NCBI GenBank assembly: GCA_026770705.1
Contig: JANJGN010000052.1
Span: forward strand, 2,108,001 to 2,172,000
Source: Isurus oxyrinchus
Lineage: Eukaryota
Reading direction: 5' to 3'
DNA length: 64,000 nucleotides
The translations under genes were made by a program, and so were the position numbers. The notes below the pieces were generated by a model, which was not told the origin of the DNA, did no database searches, and saw only the letters and a list, made by a program, of their open reading frames with translations. Shown here in pieces: positions 12,224 to 60,496 of this stretch; the first letter of the stretch is position 1, and every line of letters begins with the position of its first letter.

Positions 12224-14320
12224 GGTGAGGTGAGAGTGACTGCCTTTGACATCAAGGCTGCATTTGACCGAGTGTGGCATCTAGGATCCCGAGTAAAACT
12301 GGAGTCAATGGGAATCAGGGGTGGTACGAAAGTATAATAATTTGCTTAATATTTTCCTGGTTTGTTGTAAACTAGGTTTATGGGTGTGAGTGTAGATGGG
12401 TCTGTCTGTGTGGTTTAATTACACCTGGAGTCAGGTAGACTGCAAGTTTGAGATTATCAAAAGAAGCTAGGTGTAGAAATGTACTTGAAATGCTAATGAG
12501 TGAACATGGAGGCTTTCTTTGCATGTGAGGTGAGAAAGAGAATTTTAATTTTTAGGTAAGTGAAGGGATTGTTTGGATTTCAAAGGGCTGTTGGTCTGTT
12601 TACAACGAGGCCGATATGCAAGGCAAAGGAGTGTGTTTATTTTTCCCAAAGGTTATTGACAACATTGGCAACATGAAAGTTTTTATATTATGGGAAATGT
12701 ATCATTCCAAAGACATATGGAACAATGAAATTTACATATCAAAGAGAGAGAAACATCAACAAAGGAGAATGAAAGGCTATGTTGGGGATCATGTAAAATC
12801 TAACAAGAGTGTGTGAATCAGCCTTGAAGAAGCCTCCAGGCATTTGTCCATAGGTCTGTTATGTTCAGTGACTGTCGTTCGAGAAAGCCATTTGGAAATC
12901 CACTCTCAAGTGTGTTCTGTGTTAACTTGCTGGTTCTGTTTTTAAATCTAAAATCTATTTTGGTTTATTGCCTAAAAGGAGTTTTACTGCTCACTTCCAG
13001 ACTTCCCAATGCCTGTCCACCATCTTCAAGGTTAATTAGGAAGTTTAGGATTTGTTATAGTAGTAACCGTATCCTTATGTGTGTGCTTTAAATCTTAAAT
13101 AAATATTAAAATTTAATTTTTAAGATCTCTAAATGTCTTGGTTGACACATTACTCCTGAATTCAGTGCACACATCTCATAATAAATACAAATCGCAAAAC
13201 TGTTGTGATAGTGTGACAAAGTTTCCCTTGTGGATTTGGTCCCCCGGCACACATCATCTACCACATCATAACAGAGGGAAAACTCTCCACTGGTTGGAGC
13301 CATACCCAGCACAAAGGAAGATAGTTGTGGTTGTTGGAGGTCAATCATCTCAGTTCCAGGACATCACTGCAGGAGTTACTCAGGGTAGTGTCCAAGGCCC
13401 AACCACCTTCAGCTGCTTCATCAATGACCTTCCTTCCATCATAAGGACAGAAGTGTGGATGTTCACTGATGATTGCACAATGTTCAGCACCATTCACGTC
13501 TCCTCAGATACTGAAGCAGTCCTTGTCCAAATGCAGCAAGACCTGGACAATATCCAGGCTTGGGCTGACAAGTGTCAGGCAATGACCATCTCCAATAAGA
13601 GAGAATCTAACCATCGCTCCTTGATGTTCAATGACATTACCACTGCTGAATGCCCCACTATCAACATCCTGGTGGTTACCATTGACCAGAAATTGTACTG
13701 GACTAGCCATAAAAATACTGTGGCTACAAGAGCAGGTCAGAGGCTGGGAATCATGCAGTGAGTAACTCACTCCAGACTCCCCAAAACCTGTCCACCGTCT
13801 TCAAGGCACAGGTCAGGAGTGTGATGGAAGACTCTCCACTTGCCTGGATGAGTGCAGCTCCAACAAGATTCAATAAACTCAACACCACTCAGGACAAAGC
13901 AGCCCCACTAGTTCGGCTCCCCATCCACAAACATTCACTCTCTGCACAACCGACACACAGTAGCAGCAGTGTGTACCAGCTACAAGGTGCACTGCAGGAA
14001 CTCACCAAAACTCCTTAGGCAGCACCTTCAAACACACGACCACTACCATCTCGAATTACAGGGCAGCAGATACATGGTAACACCACCACCTGGAAGTTAC
14101 CCTCCAAGTCACTCACTATCCTGACTTGGAAATATATCGGCCGTTCCTTCACAGTCACTGGGTCCTAATCCTGGAACACCCTCCCTAACAGCATTGTGGG
14201 TGTACCTACACCACATAGACTGCAACAGTTCAAGAAGGCAGCTCATTACCATATTCTCACGGGCTATTAGGGATGGGCAATAATTCTGGCCTCGCCAGTT
14301 CCGTCCATATCCCATAAATG
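12224..14320 (+). mobile_element. LINE RT and 3' end (HER1/CR1-like) interrupted by a solo-LTR-like element at 12322-13273
   Basis: ITAGVTQGSVQGPTTFSCFINDLP...FTDDCT RT motifs; LINE sequence resumes across a TG...CATAACA insert. Confidence 0.8.
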
Positions 14321-25155: not shown

Positions 25156-25975
25156 GTACAAATTCATTACTGATCGGAACTCAGGGAATTGGATTCTTTC
25201 CTGGAGTGAGGAAGTGAACATTTAATTTTAGAGAAAAGGGTTAGTGATCACACAGAGAGTGAGTGAATAGCGAGTCAGAGAATTTAGCAAAAGCAAAAGT
25301 CTCATACGGACTCGAAACACCAACTCTGTTTCTCTCTCCACAGATGCTGTCAGACCGGCTGAGTTTTTCCAGCATTTTCTGTTTGTGCATCAGAGAGCTT
25401 GTTTCAATAGGAATGACAGTGCATTTATATAGCACCTTTAATGCAGTAAAACATCCTTATTGCTTCACAGGATTCCCCCACAAGGGGTAACATCCCCTCA
25501 GCATCCACCCTGTCAAACCCCCCACCACCTCAGAATCTTATATGTTTCAATAAGATCACCTCTCATTCTTCTAAACTCCAATGGATACAGGGCCCAACCT
25601 GCTCAACATTTCCTCATAAGACAAACCCCCTTCATCCCAGGAATCAGCCCAGTGATCCTCCTCTGAGCTGCCTCCAATGCAGAGTCTATCCCTCCCTAAG
25701 TAAGGAGACCAGAACTCTACACACTGCTCCTGATACAATCTCACCAACGCCCTGTACAGTTGTAGCAAGACTTCCCTCCTTTTATACTCCATCCCTTTGC
25801 AATAAAGGCCAACATTCCACTTGCCTTCCTCATTCCGTGCTGTTCCTGAATGCTGACTTTCTGTGATTCATGTACAAGGACACCCAGATCCCTCTGTACC
25901 GCATTCTGCTGCCTCTCTCCATTGAAGTAATATTCTGCTTTTTGATGTCCTGTCTCTTCCCTTGTTGCCTTTCAG

Positions 25976-26332
25976 GAGTGACGTCAGAGGGATGGTCTAT
26001 GAAGGCGCTGTCTCGGAGGGCCATCAGCAGCTCTTGTGTGGTTATTCCGTGTAGCTTTGACTTTCCTTCCCACTCTTACACAGCACTGCACGGAGCTTGG
26101 TATAAATATTGGTATAGATGGAAATATACCATCACATACACCAAAGATCCCAACTATGCGATGGCCACATTCGTGGGACGTGCTAAAATAATCGGCGACT
26201 TGGAAGGGAAGAATTGTTCGGTGAGGATTGACAGTCTCAGAGCTGAAGATAGTGATGTGTATTACTTTTATGTGGATGTGGAGGGCTACACAGATCACAC
26301 TTTTACACAACCAGTCCAACTCCAGGTTCTTG
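25976..26332 (+). CDS. Gene B Siglec-type V-set Ig exon (essential Arg replaced by Tyr)
   Basis: ttcag|GA...CTTG|gtaagt, 357 nt; SCVVIPCSF...GAWY...FVGRAKIIGDLEGKNCSVRI...EDSDVYYFYV; Siglec B- and E-strand Cys present, no F-strand Cys. Confidence 0.92.
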
Positions 26333-27439
26333 GTAAGTCCCAGTTCCTTTCACACTCAGTCTATCAGCACAAGGGGGTCATGTTCTCATCTCAGAGCCAG
26401 GCAGTCATGGGTTGAATTCCTGCTCCAGGAGATGTCAGAACAAAGTCCAGTATGTGATCTGGTGCAGTACTGAGGGAGTTCCACACTGTCAGAGGGTCAG
26501 TACTGAGGGAGTGCTGCACTGTCGGAGGGTCAGTACTGAGCGAGTGCCACACTGTCAGAGCATCAGTACTGCGGGAGTGCTGCACTGTCGGACGGTCAGT
26601 ACTGAGGGAGTGCTACACTGTCGGAGGGTGAGTACTGAGGGAGTGCTGCACTGTCACCGGGTCAGTACTGATGGAGTGCTGTACTGTCGGAGGGTCAGTA
26701 CAGGGGGAGTTCTGCACTGTCGGAGGGTGAGTACCGAGGGGGTGCTGCACCTTTGGGGGGTCAGTATTGAGGGAGTGCTGCACCGTTGGGGGGTCTTTGC
26801 CGAGTGAGTGCTGCTCTGTCTGAGAATTATCACTTGTATCAAAATGTTTTTAACTTTACTGTTGTTCCCACTTCAGCTGCAACTGCTCCACATCCCCATG
26901 TGTTAACTGGAGCATGTCAGCCTGGAGTTACGTGGAATTGCAGAGCAGAATCTGCTCTCACACATTGAAGCTGGCAATCGCTAAGTGTCCCTCAGTGATG
27001 ATGTTTTCTGATGGAATGAAACTTGGCAAAGCCGTGGGTAGTGATAAGGAGAGATTGGGCATGAGAGGGGCAGGATCAGTGTGAGGTGGGCAGACACATG
27101 GCTGATGCAGTTCAGCGCAGTGTCGTGTGAAGTGACGCACTTTGTCAGGATGAATACAGACAGATATTGGACAGTAATGATTTGGACAGGTGTAGGTGAG
27201 CAGAGACCTGGGCGTCTCTCTGCACTCATTCTGAAAGATTAAAGGACAAATTGTTGAGGTGATGAAGAAAGAAAATGTCTTCCTTGTGTTAACAGACTGA
27301 GGAACCCAGTTAAAAGCAAAGAGATCATGCGGGAACTTTATAAATCACTGGTTAGAACTCAGCTGGAATATTGTTCAGAACGCTGGGCCTCCACACTTCA
27401 GGAAAGATGTAAGAGCTTCAGAAAGGGTGTCCAAGAGGA

Positions 27440-44992: not shown

Positions 44993-45366
44993 TTGGACTG
45001 TCACAAGAGTGGAAAGGTGACACTCCACGAGAGGTGACAGCACAGGAAGGTTCATGTGTACAGATTCCATGTCATTACAGTTACTTATCAAATTTCGTAG
45101 GGAGATCACGTGCAGAATCTGGTTGAAAGGAATAGATGGGAACCCACAGCCGAAATGGTCTATAGCCTTTCACTCCGAGGGTCACAATCACAGGGATCAA
45201 AGATTCCGCCATCGTACCCGGCTGTCTGGAGACCTGAAAGATGGCGACTGTTCCCTGATTATAAACAACATCAGACGGGAAGATGCAGGACCTTATTTTT
45301 TCAGAATAGAGTTTGACAGCAGGAATAGTTACAGCTACTATCCTGTAACCCAGCTTGACGTTTCTG
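44993..45366 (+). pseudogene. Gene C V-set exon with intact sialic-acid-binding Arg
   Basis: GLSQEWKGDTPREVTAQEGSCVQIPCHYSY / frameshift / IWLKG...FRHRTRLSGDLKDGDCSLIINNIRREDAGPYFFRIEFDSRNSYSY; 374 nt (3n-1), donor G|gtaagt. Confidence 0.85.
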
Positions 45367-45889
45367 GTAAGTGCTGTGTTATAATTACTCAACAATTCAC
45401 ATCCAACACTCAATGGGAAATAACACAAACTGTGACGTTTACATAATAACACAAAACACAGCTTATTATAACACACTGTCTGATTCTCAATAACCTGGTG
45501 ATAGCTTCCAGTTCAGTCCTAAAGCAACCTCTAAAAATCACTTTAATATCAATGATGAAAAGCATTAACTGTACCGACATCTTTCATTCTACATCAGCAC
45601 TCCCTCAGCACTGACCCTCTGACAGTGCAGCCTGTTCTCAGTATCCACATTCTCAGGCCACTCAAAGTGCTTCACAGTCGATAGAAGTTAATTGATCTTT
45701 ATATGATTATTGCTGAATGAAGAGACAAGCTGTCTAAACTTCTCATATCGCAAACAGCATTCTCCACGGCAACACCTCCACCTATCAGAGACCACTTGCC
45801 AACCAATCAGCACTGTCTTTCCATTAAGTATAAATTGTTGTTCACTTTCTGTTGGTAATCGTGCAAACGGGGTTCTTGATTCCTGCCAT

Positions 45890-54509: not shown

Positions 54510-54515
54510 TTTATT
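54510..54515 (-). terminator. Probable polyadenylation signal of the hepcidin-like gene
   Basis: AATAAA on the - strand about 830 nt after the stop, followed by a U/GU-rich stretch. Confidence 0.5.
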
Positions 54516-55346
54516 CATTTTTTTTTACAAATCATAATCTTTACAATTAAAGTCCCGACAAGATGATGGTGAATCATGAACACATTGTCGGGGTGAATCT
54601 GTGCCCGGGAGCAGAAAGCAGCAAAATCAGGAGCCCGCTTTACATCTCTCTGAATTTTAACTATCATTAACCCCAGTAACATCCATTCAAATGACTTAGT
54701 CATAAGATTCCTCACACATTCACTTGCACACTCACACACCCACACCCACACAGAGACACAGACACACTCACTCATTCACATTGACATACACTGACAGTCA
54801 CACACACCCACACAGACACACTGACACACTCACTCATTCACATTGACACACACTGACACAGTCACACACACCCACACAGACACACTGACACACTCACTCA
54901 TTCACATTGACACACACTGACACAGTCACACACACCCACACAGACACACTGACACACTCACTCATTCACATTGACACACACATATTGACAGTCACACACA
55001 TACACACACACACACGCTCATAAAGACAGACACAAACACAGTCACGTGAGGTGAATAGTGTCGATGTATTTAAGGGGGAGCTGGATAAACACACGAGGGA
55101 GAAATGAATAGAAGGATATGGTGATGGGGTGAGATGGAGAAGGGGTGGGCGGAGACTCGTGTGGAGCAGAAACACCAGCATGGAGCAGATGGGCCGAATG
55201 GCTTCTTTCCCTGCTGTAAAACGCAGGTAAAGTTTCAGTTGGAATTAATGAACAGGGCCTGTGTTAAATAGATTGCTAAGCAGTAGATAAGGAGGGGAGA
55301 GGCTGTGGCATGGTGCAGGATGACCTTGCGTGAATGAGGCCAGGGT

Positions 55347-55463
55347 CTAAAATATGCAGCAGATACCACAAGTCTCATTTGATTCTCTCCAATTACAGCA
55401 GTGACAGCAGAATCTGCAGTGCCGCTGTCTGCTCATTCTGTTCTGGCGCTGCAGCAAGGAGCC
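55347..55463 (-). CDS. hamp: Hepcidin-like gene exon 3 (cleavage site and 8-Cys mature peptide)
   Basis: Minus strand cttttccag|GGC...; GSLLQRQNR MSRQRHCRFCCHCCNWRESNETCGICCIF*; C-x2-CC-x-CC-xn-C-G-x-CC-x2-stop is the hepcidin pattern. Confidence 0.92.
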   Translation of the reverse strand, partial: GSLLQRQNRMSRQRHCRFCCHCCNWRESNETCGICCIF

Positions 55464-55549
55464 CTGGAAAAGCAGGAGGACAATAGGTGAGAACATTCCG
55501 GAAAGAAAGAAGGCATCATTTCAATCAGGCGCGTCATTGGAAGGAGGAT

Positions 55550-55930
55550 GGCGCATTTCTATAGCGCCTTTCCCCTCCTCAGGATGGCCCAAAGTGTTCC
55601 ACAGCTGAAGGAAGGACTTTTTCTGAAGTGAGCTCACCGCTGTAATGTAGGAAACGCAGCAGGCAATTCACGCACAGCAAGATCCCACAAACAGAAATGT
55701 GATAATGGCCCCGATTTTCAGTTTTTTACCAATGTCAGTTGAGGGATAAATGTTTGCCCCAGGAAAGCGGACATAACTGCATCCCATCCACCCCCCACCA
55801 CCCCCTCCACACATACCCCCAACTCCTGACGCACTTCATTTAAATTGTGGCCATGGAATCCTCTATATCCACCTGAGAGGGCAGATGTTGTCTCAGTTTA
55901 ATATCTCATCTGAAAGACAGCGCCTTCAAC
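55550..55930 (-). mobile_element. SINE (DeuSINE-like); further copies near 5840-5990, 15150-15295, 22140-22410, 57930-58230
   Basis: Recurrent core gtaatgtaggaaacgcagcag...cacagcaagatcccacaaacagcaatgtga; family name is from recall. Confidence 0.6.
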
Positions 55931-57773
55931 AGTGCAGCACCCCCTCAGTACTGACCCTCCGACTGTGCAGCACTCCCTCAGTACTGACCGTCTGACAATG
56001 CAGCACCCCCTCAGTACTGACCCTCCAACAGTGCAGCACTCCCTCAGTACTGGCCGTCTGACAATGCAGCACCCCCTCAGTACTGACCCTCCGACTGTGC
56101 AGTCCCCCGCCGGTACTGACCCTCTGACAGTGCAGCACTCCAAGACTGACCGTCTGACAATGCAGCACGCCCTCAGTACTGACCCTCCGACTGTCCTGCC
56201 CCCCCGCCGGTACTGACCCTCCGACAGCTCGGTAATTTCTCAATTATGCCTGGTGGTCCTTTTAACTCAGAGCTGAGAGTTGCAGAGAATCGAGCACACA
56301 TCCTGAACTGACACTTGCAGTGCAAGTACTGGGAGCGCGCTGGTCATTATCATGCTGCTGTCTGTGGGATCTTACTGTGCGCCAATGGCTGATTCTTTTC
56401 CCACAGTACATCAGTGACCTCACATGAAAGAAAAAAAGCACTTGATTGTCCGCGAAACAGTTTGGGACGTCCTGATGTGTTGGAAGGCGCTAGAGAAATG
56501 CAAGTCCTCTTTGTCTTTCACTCGATCCTCTAAGGTGTCTGTTGATTAACCAGCCTCTCGGTGTTTGATGTAGGCCTGGTTATAAACAGTTAGAAGGATC
56601 AAATATCAAAAGTGCTTTGGCTGACAGTCAAACCGATTGTGCATTCGGAGAGATTAGATATGGTCTGCACACAATGACTCCAGTCTCTGGCACTGACTGC
56701 CGCCTGGGGTCTCCCTTCCACATAACACTCACAACTTGCATTTACACAGCGCCTCTGACATTGAAAAATGTCCCAGCCCACATTACCGGAGCGTAAATCA
56801 GAGAGAAGTCTAACACTGAGTCACATATGGAGATATTAGGGTTAGGTGACCAAAAGCTTGGTCAAAGATGTCAGTTTTTAAGGAGCGTCTTAAAGGAGAG
56901 AGAGAGAGAAAGAGACAGAGGCAGAGAGGTTAAGGGAGGGTATTCCGGAGCTCAGGGCCCCAGGCAATTGAAGGCACGGCCACCAATGGTGGAGCGATGG
57001 GAATCAGGGGGACCCGGGAGATGCAGTAATGTCAGAGATTTTGGAGGAACATCGGGACCGGAGGAGGTGTTCTCCTGCTCCATATCTCTCTCTCTCTTCC
57101 TCTCATCCACTCCTCCTCTCCCTGTCTCTCTCTCTCCTACTCTTCCTCTCAATTGCCCTCTCTCCCAATCTTTCTCTCCTCTCTCCCTTTTCCTGTCTCT
57201 CTCCCTCTCTCTCTCCCTGTCTCATTCTCCCACTCTGTATCTCTCCCTCTCTCTCACACTATTTTTGTAACTTTCGCTCACTCTGTAACTCTCCCTTTCC
57301 TGTTAATTTCTCTCTCTTGGACAATCTCTCTTCCCTTTTCACTTTCCCTCACTCTGCATCTCTTCTTTAATTTCTCCCTCTGTCACTCTCTCCCACCTAT
57401 GTTCTTTCCCTTTCACCCCTCCCCGTCCCACTCTCTGTCTCTCTCTTCCAATCCCTCCCTCCCCCATTCCATCCCTCTCTCCGACTCTCGACTCCCAGCC
57501 TCTCTTTAACCCACTCCCAGGCTGGATCAGTCTCCCTCTCACTATTCCCGGCGTGGGTTACATTTAAAATTCCTGTGGGTATATGTTCACTTCCTTGGAA
57601 TTGTCTCTTCCCAGCTTTGCAAAAAAAGGGGTGGCGGGGGGGTTCGATTTCAAACATGCCTCCTGAGTATAACCGAGACAGACTGCCACTGAAATCAGCT
57701 TGAAATCAGAAAACTTTCTGTGGAAGAAACGAGCAGGGAGAAACCTTAAAATAAGGAATGAATTTCCACCTAC

Positions 57774-57830
57774 CGTGTCCGGGGAATCCACAGATTTCTC
57801 AATCGTCGAAGAACCTAAAGCAGTGTCAAC
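57774..57830 (-). CDS. hamp: Hepcidin-like gene exon 2 (prodomain)
   Basis: Minus strand ctttttgcag|GTT...ACG|gtaggt, 57 nt, open only in phase 0: VDTALGSSTIEKSVDSPDT. Confidence 0.8.
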
Positions 57831-58549
57831 CTGCAAAAAGAAAGAATTTATCAGGGAGAAAGTGAGAGGAGGATTGAGGGAGAGGGAGAGAGAGAGAGAG
57901 AGGTACAGGAGAGAGAGGGGGAGGAGGACAGACTTGCATTTCTCTAACGCCTTTCACCACATCCCAAAGCATTTCACAGCCACTGAAGGATGTTTTTGAA
58001 GTGCACTCACACTGTAGGAAATGTGGCAGCTGATTTGTGCACAGCAAGATCCCACAAATAGCAATGTGATCATGGCCTAGATCATCTGTTTTTGGTGATG
58101 TTGGTTGAGGGATAAATATTGGTCCCAGGACACCGGGGAGAACACCCCCTGCTCTTCCTCCAAATAGTGGCTGTGGGATCTTTCACACCCGCCCGAGAGG
58201 GCAGACGGGGGACTCGGTTTAATGTCTCATTCAACATTGTTGCGCTCCCTCAGTATTAACCCTTTGACACTGCAGCACTCCCTTAGTATTAACCCTTCGA
58301 TAGTGCTGCGCTCCCTCAGTACTGTCCCTCCGTCAGTGCAGCTCTATTTCAGTACTAACCCTTCGACACAGCAGCACTCCCTCAGTACTGACCTCCGACA
58401 GTATAGCACTCCCTCAGTACTGTCCCTCCAATAGTGCAACACTTCCACACTACTGACCCTCTGAGAGTGCAGCACTCCCTCAGCACGGAGCGTTGATCTA
58501 CATTATGGGACTGAATTCCCTGGAGTGAGACTCAGACCAGTGATTTAGG

Positions 58550-59920
58550 TAGGGTTGTGGGGGCTGGAGGAGGTTACAGAGATAGGGAGGGTTGTGGGGG
58601 CTGGAGGAGGTTACAGAGATAGGGAGGGCTGTAGAGGCTGTAGGAGGTTACAGAGAAAGGGAGGGTTGTAAGGGCTGTAGGAAGTTACAGAGATAGGGAG
58701 GGTTGTAGAGGCTGTAGGAGGTTACAGAGATAGGGAGGGTTGTAGGGGCTGGAGGAGGTTACAGAGATAGGGAGGGTTGTAGGGGCTGGAGGAGGTTACA
58801 GAAATAGGGAGGGTTGTAGGGGCTGGACGAGGTTACAGAGATAGGGAGGGTTGTAGGGGCTGGAGGAGGTTACAGAAATAGGGAGGGCTGTAGAGGCTGT
58901 AGGAGGTTACAGAGATGGGGGAGTTGTGGGGGCTGGAGGAGGTTACAGAACTAGGGAGGTGTGTAGGGGCTGTAGGAGGTTACAGAGATGGGGTGGTTGT
59001 GGGGGCTGGAGGAGGTTACAGATGTAGGGAGGGTTGTAGAGGCTGGAGGAGGTTACCAAAATAGACACTGCTGTAGGGGCCACAGTAGATTACAGAGATA
59101 GGGAGAGTTATAGTGTGGAGAGGAGGTTATAGAGTTCAGGAGGATTGTAGGGGCTGGAGGAGGTTACAGTGATTGTGAGGGTTGTGGGGCCTGGAGGATT
59201 TTACAGAGATAGGGAGGGTTGTAGGGTCTGGAGCAGGTTACAGAGATAGGGAGGGTTGTAGGGTCTGGAGCAGTTTACAGAGATAGGGAGGGTTGTAAGG
59301 TCTGGAGCAGGTTACAGAGAGAGGGAGGGTTGTAGGGTCTGGAGGAGGTTACAGTGATCGTGAGGGTTGTGGGGCCTGGGGGAGGTTACAGAGATAGGGA
59401 GTGTTGTGGGGACTGTAGGAGGTTACATAGATAGGGAGGGTTGTCGGGTCTGGAGGAGGTTACAGAGATAGGGAGGGTTATAGGGACTGGAGGAGGTTAC
59501 AGAGATAGGGAGGGTTGTCGAGACTGTAGGATGTTACAGAGATAGGGATTGTTGTAGGGGCTGGAGGATGTTACAGAGATAGGGAGGGTTGTAGGGGCTG
59601 GAGGAGGTTACAGAGATAGGGAGGGTTGTAGGGGCTGGAGGAGGTTACAGAGATAGGGAGGGTTGTACGGGCTGGAGGAGGTTACAGAGATAGGGAGGGT
59701 TGTAGGGGCTGGAGGAAGTTACAGAGATAGGGAGGGTTGTAGGGGCTGGAGGAGGTTACAGAGATAGGGAGGTTTGTAGGGGCTGGAGGAGGTTACAGAG
59801 ATAGGGAGGGTTGTAAGGCCTGGTGGAGGTTACAGAGATAGGGAGGGTTGTAGGGGCTGGAGGAGTTTACAGAGATAGGGAGGGTTGTACGGGCTGGAGG
59901 AGGTTACAGAGATAGGGAGT
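58550..59920. repeat. 37-bp minisatellite in hepcidin-like intron 1
   Basis: gggagggttgtaggggctggaggaggttacagagata. Confidence 0.95.
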
Positions 59921-60120
59921 CGCTGAGGAGGGATTGAAAACAAGAATGAGAATTTCAGGGGAAATGACAGAAGGAAATGATGTTAAATTCATAGAGGGCG
60001 ACAATATTAAAGGCACGAACACAATAATATCAAACTGCGGAAGAGACCAGTCTATCTGGGTGGTAGACGTAGAGTCATGTGCAAGAAACACGTCACCCAG
60101 AGGGACATCTCTTAGCTTAA

Positions 60121-60213
60121 CCTCGACAAGGAGAAGAAGTGACTCAGCTGCAGGGAGAGCAGCAAAGTCAGAGTGAACAAGACAAGTCGCCATTTCATCT
60201 GGGAGCTTCCCAT
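60121..60213 (-). CDS. hamp: Hepcidin-like gene exon 1 (signal peptide); donor is 1 nt out of phase as assembled
   Basis: MGSSQMKWRLVLFTLTLLLSLQLSHFFSLSR, followed by ttaagc; TATA box about 70 nt upstream of the ATG. Confidence 0.78.
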
Positions 60214-60282
60214 CTCTGCCTGTCTCTTCTGATCTTCTGGCTCTGCTTTGATGCTTTGGTTTGTAACTAGAGGAGCTTCCTG

Positions 60283-60496
60283 CTCTTATACCTGAAACAC
60301 TTGAAGGGGACAGCCGCGGGTGGGTAGCTGTGTGGTATCACACCCATTTCTGGATATTGCAGTGTCGATGTTCCCTGTCCCACTGGCCTGGGACCAGCAG
60401 TAAGGTCACTGGGACATTGACTGTCTGGCGCCGAGAACTATCAGTCCCTCCGCAACGCCCTTCACCTTGTGCAAATATGTGTTCATATTGACGCAA
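60283..60496 (-). promoter_or_regulatory. Hepcidin-like proximal promoter
   Basis: TATAAGAG 60290-60283 (-); degenerate STAT-like TTCTGGATA 60348-60356; GTCT+GGCGCC 60423-60432; C/EBP TTGTGCAA 60467-60474; TGACGCAA 60489-60496. Confidence 0.65.

What the first reader, a model, noticed from the sequence alone, without database searches (positions are those of the whole stretch)
55347..55463. Atypical mature hepcidin: no DTHFP/QSHL N-terminus, 8-residue loop with an N-glycosylation sequon
Seen: after a minimal RQNR (R-x-x-R) site the 29-aa peptide starts MSRQRH. The loop between CC and C is NWRESNET (human: HRSK) and contains N-E-T. Known: the N-terminal DTHFP-type residues are needed for ferroportin regulation, and teleost HAMP2 forms lacking them are mainly antimicrobial. 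Inference: this may be an independently evolved antimicrobial-type or glycosylated hepcidin.
Basis: partly seen in the sequence, partly recalled or inferred. Interest (0 to 1): 0.78.

Follow-up and report, generated by a model that had tools for sequence, protein, structure and literature searches.

The report
Long-loop hepcidin copy, flawed splice donor
This is the last exon of a real hepcidin-family gene whose peptide has a doubled hairpin loop and lacks the iron-hormone N-terminus, but it is one copy of a strongly transcribed gene family and this copy has a damaged first splice site.

Summary
On the minus strand, 55463-55350 plus the stop at 55349-55347 reads GSLLQRQNRMSRQRHCRFCCHCCNWRESNETCGICCIF*. 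It passes Pfam's Hepcidin cut-off (29.3 bits against 27). The loop between CC and C has 8 residues and holds N-E-T.

Contigs of two runs from one sample splice three exons exactly as predicted: 60213-60121, 57830-57774 and 55463-55347.

- In this copy the intron-1 donor is TT, not GT. The matching RNA probably comes from sister copies.
- The same sample holds at least three exon 1/2 junction variants. One contig continues after ...RQNR-MS with HLSICMYCCG, a standard hormone-type N-terminus. Another has a loop of the same length reading NKKGTKKT. So this is a diverged paralogue type beside a canonical one, and the sequon is not shared.
- A sequon arises in 17% of Cys-fixed shuffles.

Function (defence-type, like teleost Hamp2) is inferred, not tested.

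The scan has met this same long-loop hepcidin many times on other DNA of this genome, including copies with the same donor flaw. I found no paper on shark hepcidin in six searches.

The parts
60427..60432 (.). GGCGCC hexamer about 215 bp upstream of the ATG. This is the motif of BMP-responsive elements in mammalian HAMP promoters (recalled), so it is a candidate regulatory site only.
   Evidence: 2 matches in the whole window (1.88 expected by chance), and one of them lies here.
60283..60290 (-). TATAAGAG, a TATA-like box about 70 bp upstream of the ATG.
   Evidence: Read. The depth of X1 contigs falls from bin 60052-60235 to bin 60236-60400, which fits a start of transcription near 60260.
60121..60213 (-). 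Coding part of exon 1: MGSSQMKWRLVLFTLTLLLSLQLSHFFSLSR. It has a signal-peptide-like hydrophobic core.
   Evidence: Translation. The exon end at 60121 is fixed by the RNA joints 57830->60121 (9 contigs in X1, 2 in X2).
60119..60120 (-). The first two intron-1 letters are TT where the spliced RNA requires a donor. The +1 position of the donor is T, not G, in this copy.
   Evidence: Sequence. Joint ends 'CT..AA, both 1' mean TT..AG or GT..CA on the minus strand. Neither is canonical.
57831..60120 (-). Intron 1, 2290 nt. It holds a minisatellite of 37 copies of a 37-bp unit at 58546-59919.
   Evidence: Joint; Tandem Repeats Finder.
57774..57830 (-). Exon 2, pro-region: VDTALGSSTIEKSVDSPDT.
   Evidence: Translation; both borders are fixed by joints.
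55464..57773 (-). Intron 2, 2310 nt, GT..AG.
   Evidence: Joint 55462->57773 '(cut +1) CT..AC' in 8 contigs of X1. A variant with one changed letter at 57775 has depth 13927 in X1 and 18930 in X2.
55347..55463 (-). Coding part of exon 3 plus the stop: the end of the pro-region, the cleavage sites and the mature peptide. This is the finding.
55437..55448 (-). R-Q-N-R, a minimal furin-type site and the probable cleavage point.
   Evidence: The sister contig with a standard N-terminus keeps the same six residues between this site and the first Cys.
55428..55439 (-). R-M-S-R, a second and overlapping R-x-x-R. Cleavage here would leave Q-R-H-C...
   Evidence: read from the sequence. Use of this site is not tested.
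55350..55436 (-). Predicted 29-residue mature peptide MSRQRHCRFCCHCCNWRESNETCGICCIF, net charge +2.
55371..55394 (-). The 8-residue loop NWRESNET. The N-E-T sequon lies at 55371-55379.
   Evidence: The alignment to bass hepcidin 1S6W needs a 3-residue gap here.
55084..55346 (-). 3' untranslated region, at least this far. The first AATAAA lies at 54515.
   Evidence: Very deep X1/X2 contigs in bins 55084-55451; AATAAA scan.

Best explanation
55347-55463 is the last exon of one copy of a multi-copy 'long-loop' hepcidin paralogue. I did not verify the taxon.

The gene type has the classic HAMP build:
- exon 1 encodes the signal peptide;
- exon 2 encodes the pro-region;
- exon 3 encodes the end of the pro-region, an R-x-x-R convertase site and an eight-cysteine peptide.

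The peptide most likely folds into the four-disulfide hairpin of hepcidins, with a tip loop of 8 residues instead of 4-5 (inferred). Its six residues before the first Cys, MSRQRH, are polar and basic. They replace the His-aromatic/hydrophobic motif that hormone-type hepcidins insert into ferroportin. It therefore probably does not control ferroportin. It more likely acts as a secreted defence-type or other non-hormonal peptide, as Hamp2 does in teleosts (inferred by analogy).

A hormone-type paralogue with the same pro-region is transcribed in the same sample (shown by one contig).

The family is transcribed and spliced at high level (shown). This particular copy carries T instead of G at the first intron letter. 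Unless that letter is an assembly error, this copy cannot make the in-frame mRNA. The GT one letter upstream would shift the frame into a stop in exon 2.
For: Family membership:
- Pfam Hepcidin 29.3 bits against a cut-off of 27, on exon 3 alone.
- Best relevant solved structure by sequence is bass hepcidin 1S6W, with CRFCC.CC...CG.CC.F aligned.

Gene build and transcription:
- Contigs of X1 and X2 (2 of the 4 runs laid; both are one sample) join 60121 to 57830 and 57774 to 55463.
- Exon bins reach 1e5-1e6 in depth, against about 1e3 or less in most intron bins away from repeats. The tool warns that contig depth is a poor measure.

Multi-copy expression:
- Three different exon 1/2 junction sequences are seen: AGG|GTT, AGG|GGT and CGG|GTT.
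- Two exon 2/3 junction sequences are seen: ACG|GGC and ATG|GGC.
- That is more than the two alleles of one locus can give.

Paralogue types (loose ends translated by hand):
- At 55431 a contig continues H-L-S-I-C-M-Y-C-C-G, in register with the window's R-Q-R-H-C-R-F-C-C-H.
- At 55375 a contig carries the loop N-K-K-G-T-K-K-T.

Donor flaw:
-.
- Organism B's contig 60003-60400 shows no indel there.

Context:
- V-set exons with sub-threshold Ig_CD22 matches lie at 25870-26412 and 45054-45443.
- In man HAMP lies beside MAG and CD22 (recalled).

Analogy:
- In sea bass, synthetic Hamp1 lowered ferroportin expression in a dose-dependent way (passage read). The paper's title and abstract start, seen in the search listing, state that Hamp2 does not regulate it (PMC5665920).
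- The nine N-terminal residues of human hepcidin are the active epitope (PMC7915682, table read).
Against: - No function was tested.
- Net charge is only +2, weak for a membrane-active peptide, though sea bass Hamp2 has a similar count of basic residues (sequence).
- The GGCGCC motif in the promoter would fit iron/BMP control, which is a hormone-like trait.
- The two paralogue fragments each rest on one contig, with 19 to 35 loose letters.
- I could not read letter 60120 in the reads: 137 rows of differences were not shown. The donor flaw could therefore be an assembly error or a polymorphism.
- X1 and X2 are only guessed to be RNA by the tool. Their spliced joints are my ground for calling them RNA.
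- Single-sequence AlphaFold2 gave a helical hairpin, not a beta-hairpin (pLDDT 74.8; the other four models 46-62). I take this as uninformative.
Confidence: 0.62

Rival explanations
1. This copy is intact and expressed. The T at the first intron letter is an assembly error or a rare allele, and part of the abundant RNA comes from this locus.
For: - All other signals of the copy are intact: TATA box, ATG, open exons, intron-1 acceptor, GT..AG intron 2, eight Cys and the stop.
- Spliced contigs that match the window's own ACG at the end of exon 2 exist in X1 (8 contigs).
Against: - Earlier scan notes report the same kind of donor flaw in at least four other copies. That points to an inherited change rather than a random error. 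I did not check these notes.
- Organism B's contig shows no indel at the site.
- The most abundant exon 2/3 junction in X1 and X2 differs from the window at 57775.
Confidence: 0.25
2. The long-loop peptide is itself an iron hormone. It binds ferroportin despite its different N-terminus, possibly after cleavage at R-M-S-R, which would expose Q-R-H with a His at position 3 as in D-T-H.
For: - The second R-x-x-R is present.
- The C-x-F-CC core and the C-terminal CG-x-CC-x-F are kept.
- A GGCGCC lies in the promoter.
- Transcript abundance is very high, as for liver hepcidin.
Against: - There is no aromatic or hydrophobic residue at the positions of F4 and I6 of the human epitope (PMC7915682).
- A standard-type paralogue is transcribed in the same sample.
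- An N-terminal Gln tends to cyclise (recalled), which would block a free-amine metal site.
Confidence: 0.1
3. The peptide is N-glycosylated on the loop Asn, and the glycan is its functional novelty.
For: - N-E-T is present in an exposed, elongated loop.
- Sequons next to cysteines and near the C-terminus can be served after translocation by the STT3B form of oligosaccharyltransferase (recalled, not checked here).
Against: - A sequon arises in 17% of Cys-fixed shuffles.
- The one sister loop variant seen has none.
- The Asn is only 10 residues from the C-terminus, a position usually poorly used (recalled).
Confidence: 0.12
4. The whole long-loop subfamily is a transcribed relic without a function, and its odd N-terminus and loop are decay.
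For: - Several copies are flawed (notes, and this window).
- Another note reports a truncated copy spliced onto Siglec tails (s1-866030; not checked).
Against: - All eight Cys, the convertase site, the frame and the stop position are kept.
- Loop length is the same in the sister variant while 6 of 8 residues differ. That looks like diversification under a kept scaffold.
- Transcript abundance is very high.
Confidence: 0.08

Closest known systems
Teleost Hamp2-type hepcidins (e.g. sea bass Hamp2, PMC5665920; bass hepcidin structure 1S6W)
   Same: - An extra hepcidin type beside a hormone type.
- No Q-S-H-L / D-T-H-F-P type N-terminus.
- Nearly the same core: CRFCC-x-CC and CG-x-CC-x-F. Outside the loop and the N-terminus, 12 of 15 positions are identical to sea bass Hamp2 (my count, from the sequence printed).
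- Weakly cationic.
   Different: - The loop has 8 residues, not 5.
- Six polar or basic residues precede the first Cys.
- The gene is amplified with Siglec-like genes.
- Common descent with Hamp2 could not be tested and is unlikely given the taxon gap (recalled distribution of Hamp2).
Hormone-type hepcidin (human hepcidin-25; sea bass Hamp1)
   Same: - Three-exon gene with signal peptide, pro-region and R-x-x-R site.
- Eight Cys in the same order, with the stop two residues after the last CC.
- The same number (six) of residues before the first Cys.
- A neighbourhood of Siglec/CD22-like genes.
   Different: - The N-terminal ferroportin epitope is replaced: MSRQRH against DTHFPI / QSHLSL.
- The loop is doubled.
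- Many copies.
Gene families with conserved prepro-regions and hypervariable mature peptides (defensins, frog skin peptides, conotoxins; recalled)
   Same: Sister transcripts share the pro-region up to ...RQNR-MS. They diverge sharply from the third residue of the mature peptide and in the loop.
   Different: Only two short fragments were seen here, and no rate analysis was possible.

Membership tests
Hepcidin family (Pfam PF06446) | Profile score at or above the curated cut-off | tested here: met
   29.3 bits against 27, E 1.1e-6, residues 5-38 on profile positions 24-53.
Hepcidin family (Pfam PF06446) | Eight cysteines in the order C-x2-CC-x-CC-loop-C-x2-CC | tested here: met
   Present with an 8-residue loop. 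Human hepcidin has 4 loop residues and sea bass Hamp1/Hamp2 have 5.
Hepcidin family (Pfam PF06446) | Three-exon gene, with the mature peptide and convertase site in exon 3 | tested here: met
   Spliced contigs in 2 of 4 runs (one sample) join the three exons. In this copy the intron-1 donor is TT.
Hepcidin family (Pfam PF06446) | Four-disulfide beta-hairpin fold | tested here: inconclusive
   Single-sequence AlphaFold2 gave two helices, pLDDT 74.8, with the other models at 46-62. No alignment could be built.
Hepcidin family (Pfam PF06446) | Position beside MAG/CD22-type Siglec genes (as in man; recalled) | tested here: inconclusive
   V-set exons pass Pfam V-set. Ig_CD22 scores 22.9 and 22.0 bits, below its cut-off of 27 (2 of 10 ORFs tested).
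Hormone-type (ferroportin-regulating) hepcidin | N-terminal epitope of the DTHFPICIF / QSHLSLC type | tested here: not met
   The window reads MSRQRH-C-RF. Epitope sequences come from PMC7915682 and PMC5665920.
Hormone-type (ferroportin-regulating) hepcidin | Causes ferroportin internalisation or degradation | not testable with these tools
   Needs a cell assay.
Teleost Hamp2 clade | Common descent with teleost Hamp2 genes (phylogeny) | not tested
   No other cartilaginous-fish or teleost gene sequences could be fetched. The resemblance is by function-type and core motif only.
Teleost Hamp2 clade | Antimicrobial activity, induction by infection | not testable with these tools
   Needs MIC assays and challenge experiments.

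The most novel reading that the evidence does not exclude
Cartilaginous fishes may carry a megabase-scale array in which hepcidin genes were co-amplified with paired Siglec-like receptor genes. The array would yield a very highly expressed family of 'loop-diversified' hepcidins. These keep the prepro-region, the eight-Cys scaffold and an 8-residue tip, while the N-terminus and the tip sequence vary freely (NWRESNET against NKKGTKKT). That would be a new kind of vertebrate host-defence peptide repertoire built on the iron-hormone scaffold, evolved independently of teleost Hamp2.
Probability: 0.25. Interest if true: 0.7.

Novelty: new variant of a known kind. Interest (0 to 1): 0.45.

Why it matters
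Hepcidin is the master iron hormone of vertebrates, and its split into hormone-type and defence-type copies has been studied in teleosts only. A second, independent split in cartilaginous fish would differ in three ways: a doubled hairpin tip, a replaced ferroportin epitope, and many copies amplified with Siglec genes. It would show how readily this scaffold is recruited for other tasks. It would also give natural variants for testing which parts of hepcidin matter for ferroportin binding.

For this one copy the practical message is narrower. It is probably a silent duplicate, and annotation pipelines miss the whole family: no protein with three shared 5-residue words was found.

Tried and rejected
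- **Protein word search.** The search for homologous proteins on the 57-residue open frame around exon 3, scoring residues 18-57, found no candidate sharing three 5-residue words. Only proteins of 31-100 residues were candidates.
- **Representative library.** The search of protein representatives with the 38 residues gave 0 proteins at E up to 0.001 in 1.84 billion. A 38-residue query can hardly reach significance there, so this says little.
- **ESM Atlas.** The best hit scored 0.75, an unnamed plant cluster, and no structure search was possible. No lead came of it.
- **AlphaFold2.** The single-sequence model was helical, and the five models disagreed. I ran no fold search on it because the model is not trustworthy.
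- **The look-up of encoding contigs.** I asked it for the 49-residue ATG-to-stop open frame around exon 3, hoping to fetch sister copies.
- **Earlier findings by sequence.** The search of earlier findings by sequence came back blank.
- **Second hepcidin in the window.** A looser motif scan for a second or canonical hepcidin exon found none.
- **Promoter motifs.** A STAT-type TTCNNNGAA search gave 0 of 9 window matches near the promoter. The sigma-70/terminator scan of the promoter region does not apply to a eukaryotic gene and showed nothing.
- **Papers.** Six searches found no paper with shark or ray hepcidin as its subject, judging by the titles and abstract starts listed.
  - I read passages in PMC6795676, PMC9207270, PMC3832898 and PMC12421772.
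  - Only PMC9207270 bears on the question: it lists hepcidin among 49 nurse shark plasma proteins without a whale shark orthologue.
  - Its supplementary tables may hold that sequence, but supplements were closed.
  - Subscription journals are not covered.
- **Rejected reading: only hepcidin of the animal.** The standard-type fragment speaks against the idea that the odd peptide is the animal's only hepcidin.
- **Rejected reading: meaningful sequon.** The sequon is not meaningful on sequence grounds alone.
- **Spliced model.** I translated and searched the three exons apart. The exon 2 piece is too short (19 residues) for the family scan.

Full report
**What is there**

The finding's coordinates hold the coding part of a last exon on the minus strand. 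Reverse-complemented, 55463-55347 reads GSLLQRQNRMSRQRHCRFCCHCCNWRESNETCGICCIF followed by a stop. The + strand frame is full of nothing.

A polypyrimidine tract and AG precede 55463. The cysteine pattern is C-x2-CC-x-CC-x8-C-x2-CC. It is the only such pattern in six frames of the 64 kb window, and a looser scan finds no second or canonical hepcidin exon.

The 38 residues alone pass Pfam's curated threshold for Hepcidin: PF06446, 29.3 bits against 27, E 1.1e-6. Among solved structures the relevant match is bass hepcidin 1S6W. CRFCC.CC and CG.CC.F align, with a three-residue gap in the loop. The E-value of 1.3 is weak for so short a query.

**Gene model and transcription**

Upstream on the minus strand I found three elements:
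- a TATA-like box at 60290-60283;
- an ATG at 60213 opening a signal-peptide-like exon, MGSSQMKWRLVLFTLTLLLSLQLSHFFSLSR;
- a 57-nt exon at 57830-57774, VDTALGSSTIEKSVDSPDT.

I searched public runs with 55060-55470. 22 runs were listed, 14 hold part of the stretch, 3 hold half or more of its words, and none is on record as RNA.

I laid four of them on 54900-60400: X1 and X2 (organism A, one sample) and X9 and X14 (organism B).
- **X1 and X2.** Contigs join 57774 to 55463. The ends are CT..AC on the + strand, that is GT..AG on the gene's strand. There are 8 contigs in X1. A one-letter variant has depth 13,927 in X1 and 18,930 in X2. Contigs also join 60121 to 57830 (9 contigs in X1, 2 in X2).
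- **X9 and X14.** Neither shows these joints (0 of 2). They cover introns and upstream DNA with about 4% differences and behave as DNA of a related species.
- **Depth.** Exon bins in X1/X2 reach 1e5-1e6. Most intron bins away from repeats are near 1e3 or less. The tool warns that contig depth is a poor measure, so I rest the claim of transcription on the spliced joints.

X1 and X2 are one sample, so this is one independent observation. 

**This copy's first splice site is wrong**

The RNA joint puts the end of exon 1 at 60121 (...TCG AGG) and the start of exon 2 at 57830 (GTT GAC...), which keeps the frame. In the window the next two letters, 60120-60119, are TT.

The tool reports the joint's ends as CT..AA with one ambiguous letter. 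On the gene's strand that is TT..AG or GT..CA, and neither is a normal intron. The simplest reading is that the expressed copies have G at 60120 (AGG|GTAAG) and this copy has a G-to-T change at the +1 position. The GT that remains one letter upstream would give TCG AGG TTG ACA CTG CTT TAG, a stop in exon 2 (read).

Organism B's contig over 60003-60400 has no indel there. I could not read letter 60120 in any run, because 137 rows of differences were not shown and read laying is capped at one call.

I saw this flaw before I searched the scan's notes. The notes then showed that other agents reported the same kind of donor flaw in at least four other copies of this gene in the same genome. Those notes are unchecked. 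Taken at face value they argue for an inherited change in a sub-set of copies rather than a random assembly error.

**A family, not a single gene**

One sample (X1/X2) holds the following variants (joints and loose ends):
- three exon 1/2 junction sequences: AGG|GTT, AGG|GGT and CGG|GTT;
- two exon 2/3 junction sequences: ACG|GGC as in the window, and the more abundant ATG|GGC;
- a further exon 2 variant.

That is more than two alleles of one locus can give, so at least two loci are transcribed.

Two loose ends are informative. I reverse-complemented and translated both by hand.
- **At 55431.** A contig that matches the window's pro-region up to ...R-Q-N-R-M-S continues H-L-S-I-C-M-Y-C-C-G. 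This is in exact register with the window's R-Q-R-H-C-R-F-C-C-H. M-S-H-L-S-I-C is close to sea bass Hamp1 (Q-S-H-L-S-L-C) and to human D-T-H-F-P-I-C (sequences printed in PMC5665920 and PMC7915682). A standard, hormone-type hepcidin with the same pro-region is therefore transcribed in the same sample.
- **At 55375.** A contig that matches the window's ...T-C-G-I-C-C end carries the loop N-K-K-G-T-K-K-T. The length is again eight, 6 of 8 residues differ, and there is no sequon.

Each rests on one contig and 19-35 letters, so they are leads of good quality, not proof. Together they suggest a conserved prepro-region and scaffold with sharp divergence in the N-terminus and the loop.

The scan's notes say the same from other windows. 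179 notes hold the word hepcidin in this genome. Copies lie 0.84 and 1.3 Mb before this window, 0.18 Mb after it, and on other pieces. One note mentions a standard-looking hepcidin in the same animal. The scan has thus found this before on other DNA.

**Processing**

R-Q-N-R is a minimal convertase site. The standard-type sister has the same site and the same six residues before the first Cys. This supports cleavage after R-Q-N-R and a 29-residue product.

The window's peptide has a second, overlapping R-x-x-R (R-M-S-R). Cleavage there would give a 26-mer starting Q-R-H, with a His at position 3 as in human D-T-H. Whether it is used is unknown.

**What it probably does**

The nine N-terminal residues of human hepcidin are the ferroportin-active epitope (PMC7915682, table read). 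In sea bass, synthetic Hamp1 lowered ferroportin expression (passage read). The paper's title and abstract start, seen in the search listing, state that Hamp2 does not regulate it (PMC5665920).

The window's N-terminus, MSRQRH, has no aromatic or hydrophobic residue at the matching positions. The core, by contrast, is almost that of sea bass Hamp2: 12 of 15 positions outside the N-terminus and loop, by my count.

I therefore take the peptide for a non-hormonal, probably defence-type hepcidin. This is analogy, not a test. Net charge is only +2 and pI about 8.2.

The N-E-T sequon is expected in 17% of Cys-fixed shuffles, is missing from the sister loop, and lies 10 residues from the C-terminus. 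I give glycosylation about one chance in eight.

The fold could not be checked. Single-sequence AlphaFold2 gave helices, with disagreement between the models.

**Surroundings**

Two + strand ORFs, 25870-26412 and 45054-45443, pass Pfam V-set and come close to Ig_CD22 (22.9 and 22.0 bits, cut-off 27). That is 2 of 10 ORFs tested.

GGCGCC, the core of BMP-responsive elements in mammalian HAMP promoters (recalled), occurs only twice in the window. One occurrence lies 215 bp upstream of the ATG. By my arithmetic the chance that one of two sites falls within 300 bp upstream is about 1%. There is no exact STAT-type site.

**Known or new**

Orthology, conservation in other species and independence from teleost Hamp2 therefore remain untested.

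Six paper searches found no study of shark or ray hepcidin. PMC9207270 lists hepcidin among nurse shark plasma proteins (passage read). Its supplements, which I could not open, may hold a sequence.

I rate the family as a new variant of a known kind. This copy is a probably silent member of it.

Noticed in passing
window 60427-60432: GGCGCC occurs only twice in 64 kb, and one copy lies about 215 bp upstream of the hepcidin ATG, followed directly by AGAC. This is a possible BMP/SMAD-responsive element, which would mean iron-type regulation of a non-hormone-type copy.
   Followed up: partly
window 56575-57773: In X1 (1 contig, depth 844) and X2 (1 contig, depth 98) the exon 2 donor is also joined to an acceptor at about 56576 inside intron 2. 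This is a minor alternative or cryptic exon.
   Followed up: no
window 58546-59919: Intron 1 holds a minisatellite of 37 copies of a 37-bp unit (86% matches). SINE-like 33-bp periodic repeats lie at 55923-56227 and 58245-58483, in opposite orientation.
   Followed up: no
window 25870-26412 and 45054-45443: V-set immunoglobulin exons on the + strand, with near-threshold matches to the first Ig domain of CD22. Siglec-like genes flank the hepcidin gene.
   Followed up: partly
window 13138-13758: An open frame with a reverse-transcriptase domain (RVT_1, 32.7 bits): a retroelement fragment inside the Siglec-like region.
   Followed up: no
window 55097: One X1 contig follows the window's 3' UTR down to 55097 and then continues for 255 letters unlike the window. 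Sister copies appear to differ in what follows the 3' UTR, where this copy has a 64-bp-period CA-rich repeat at 54737-55015.
   Followed up: no
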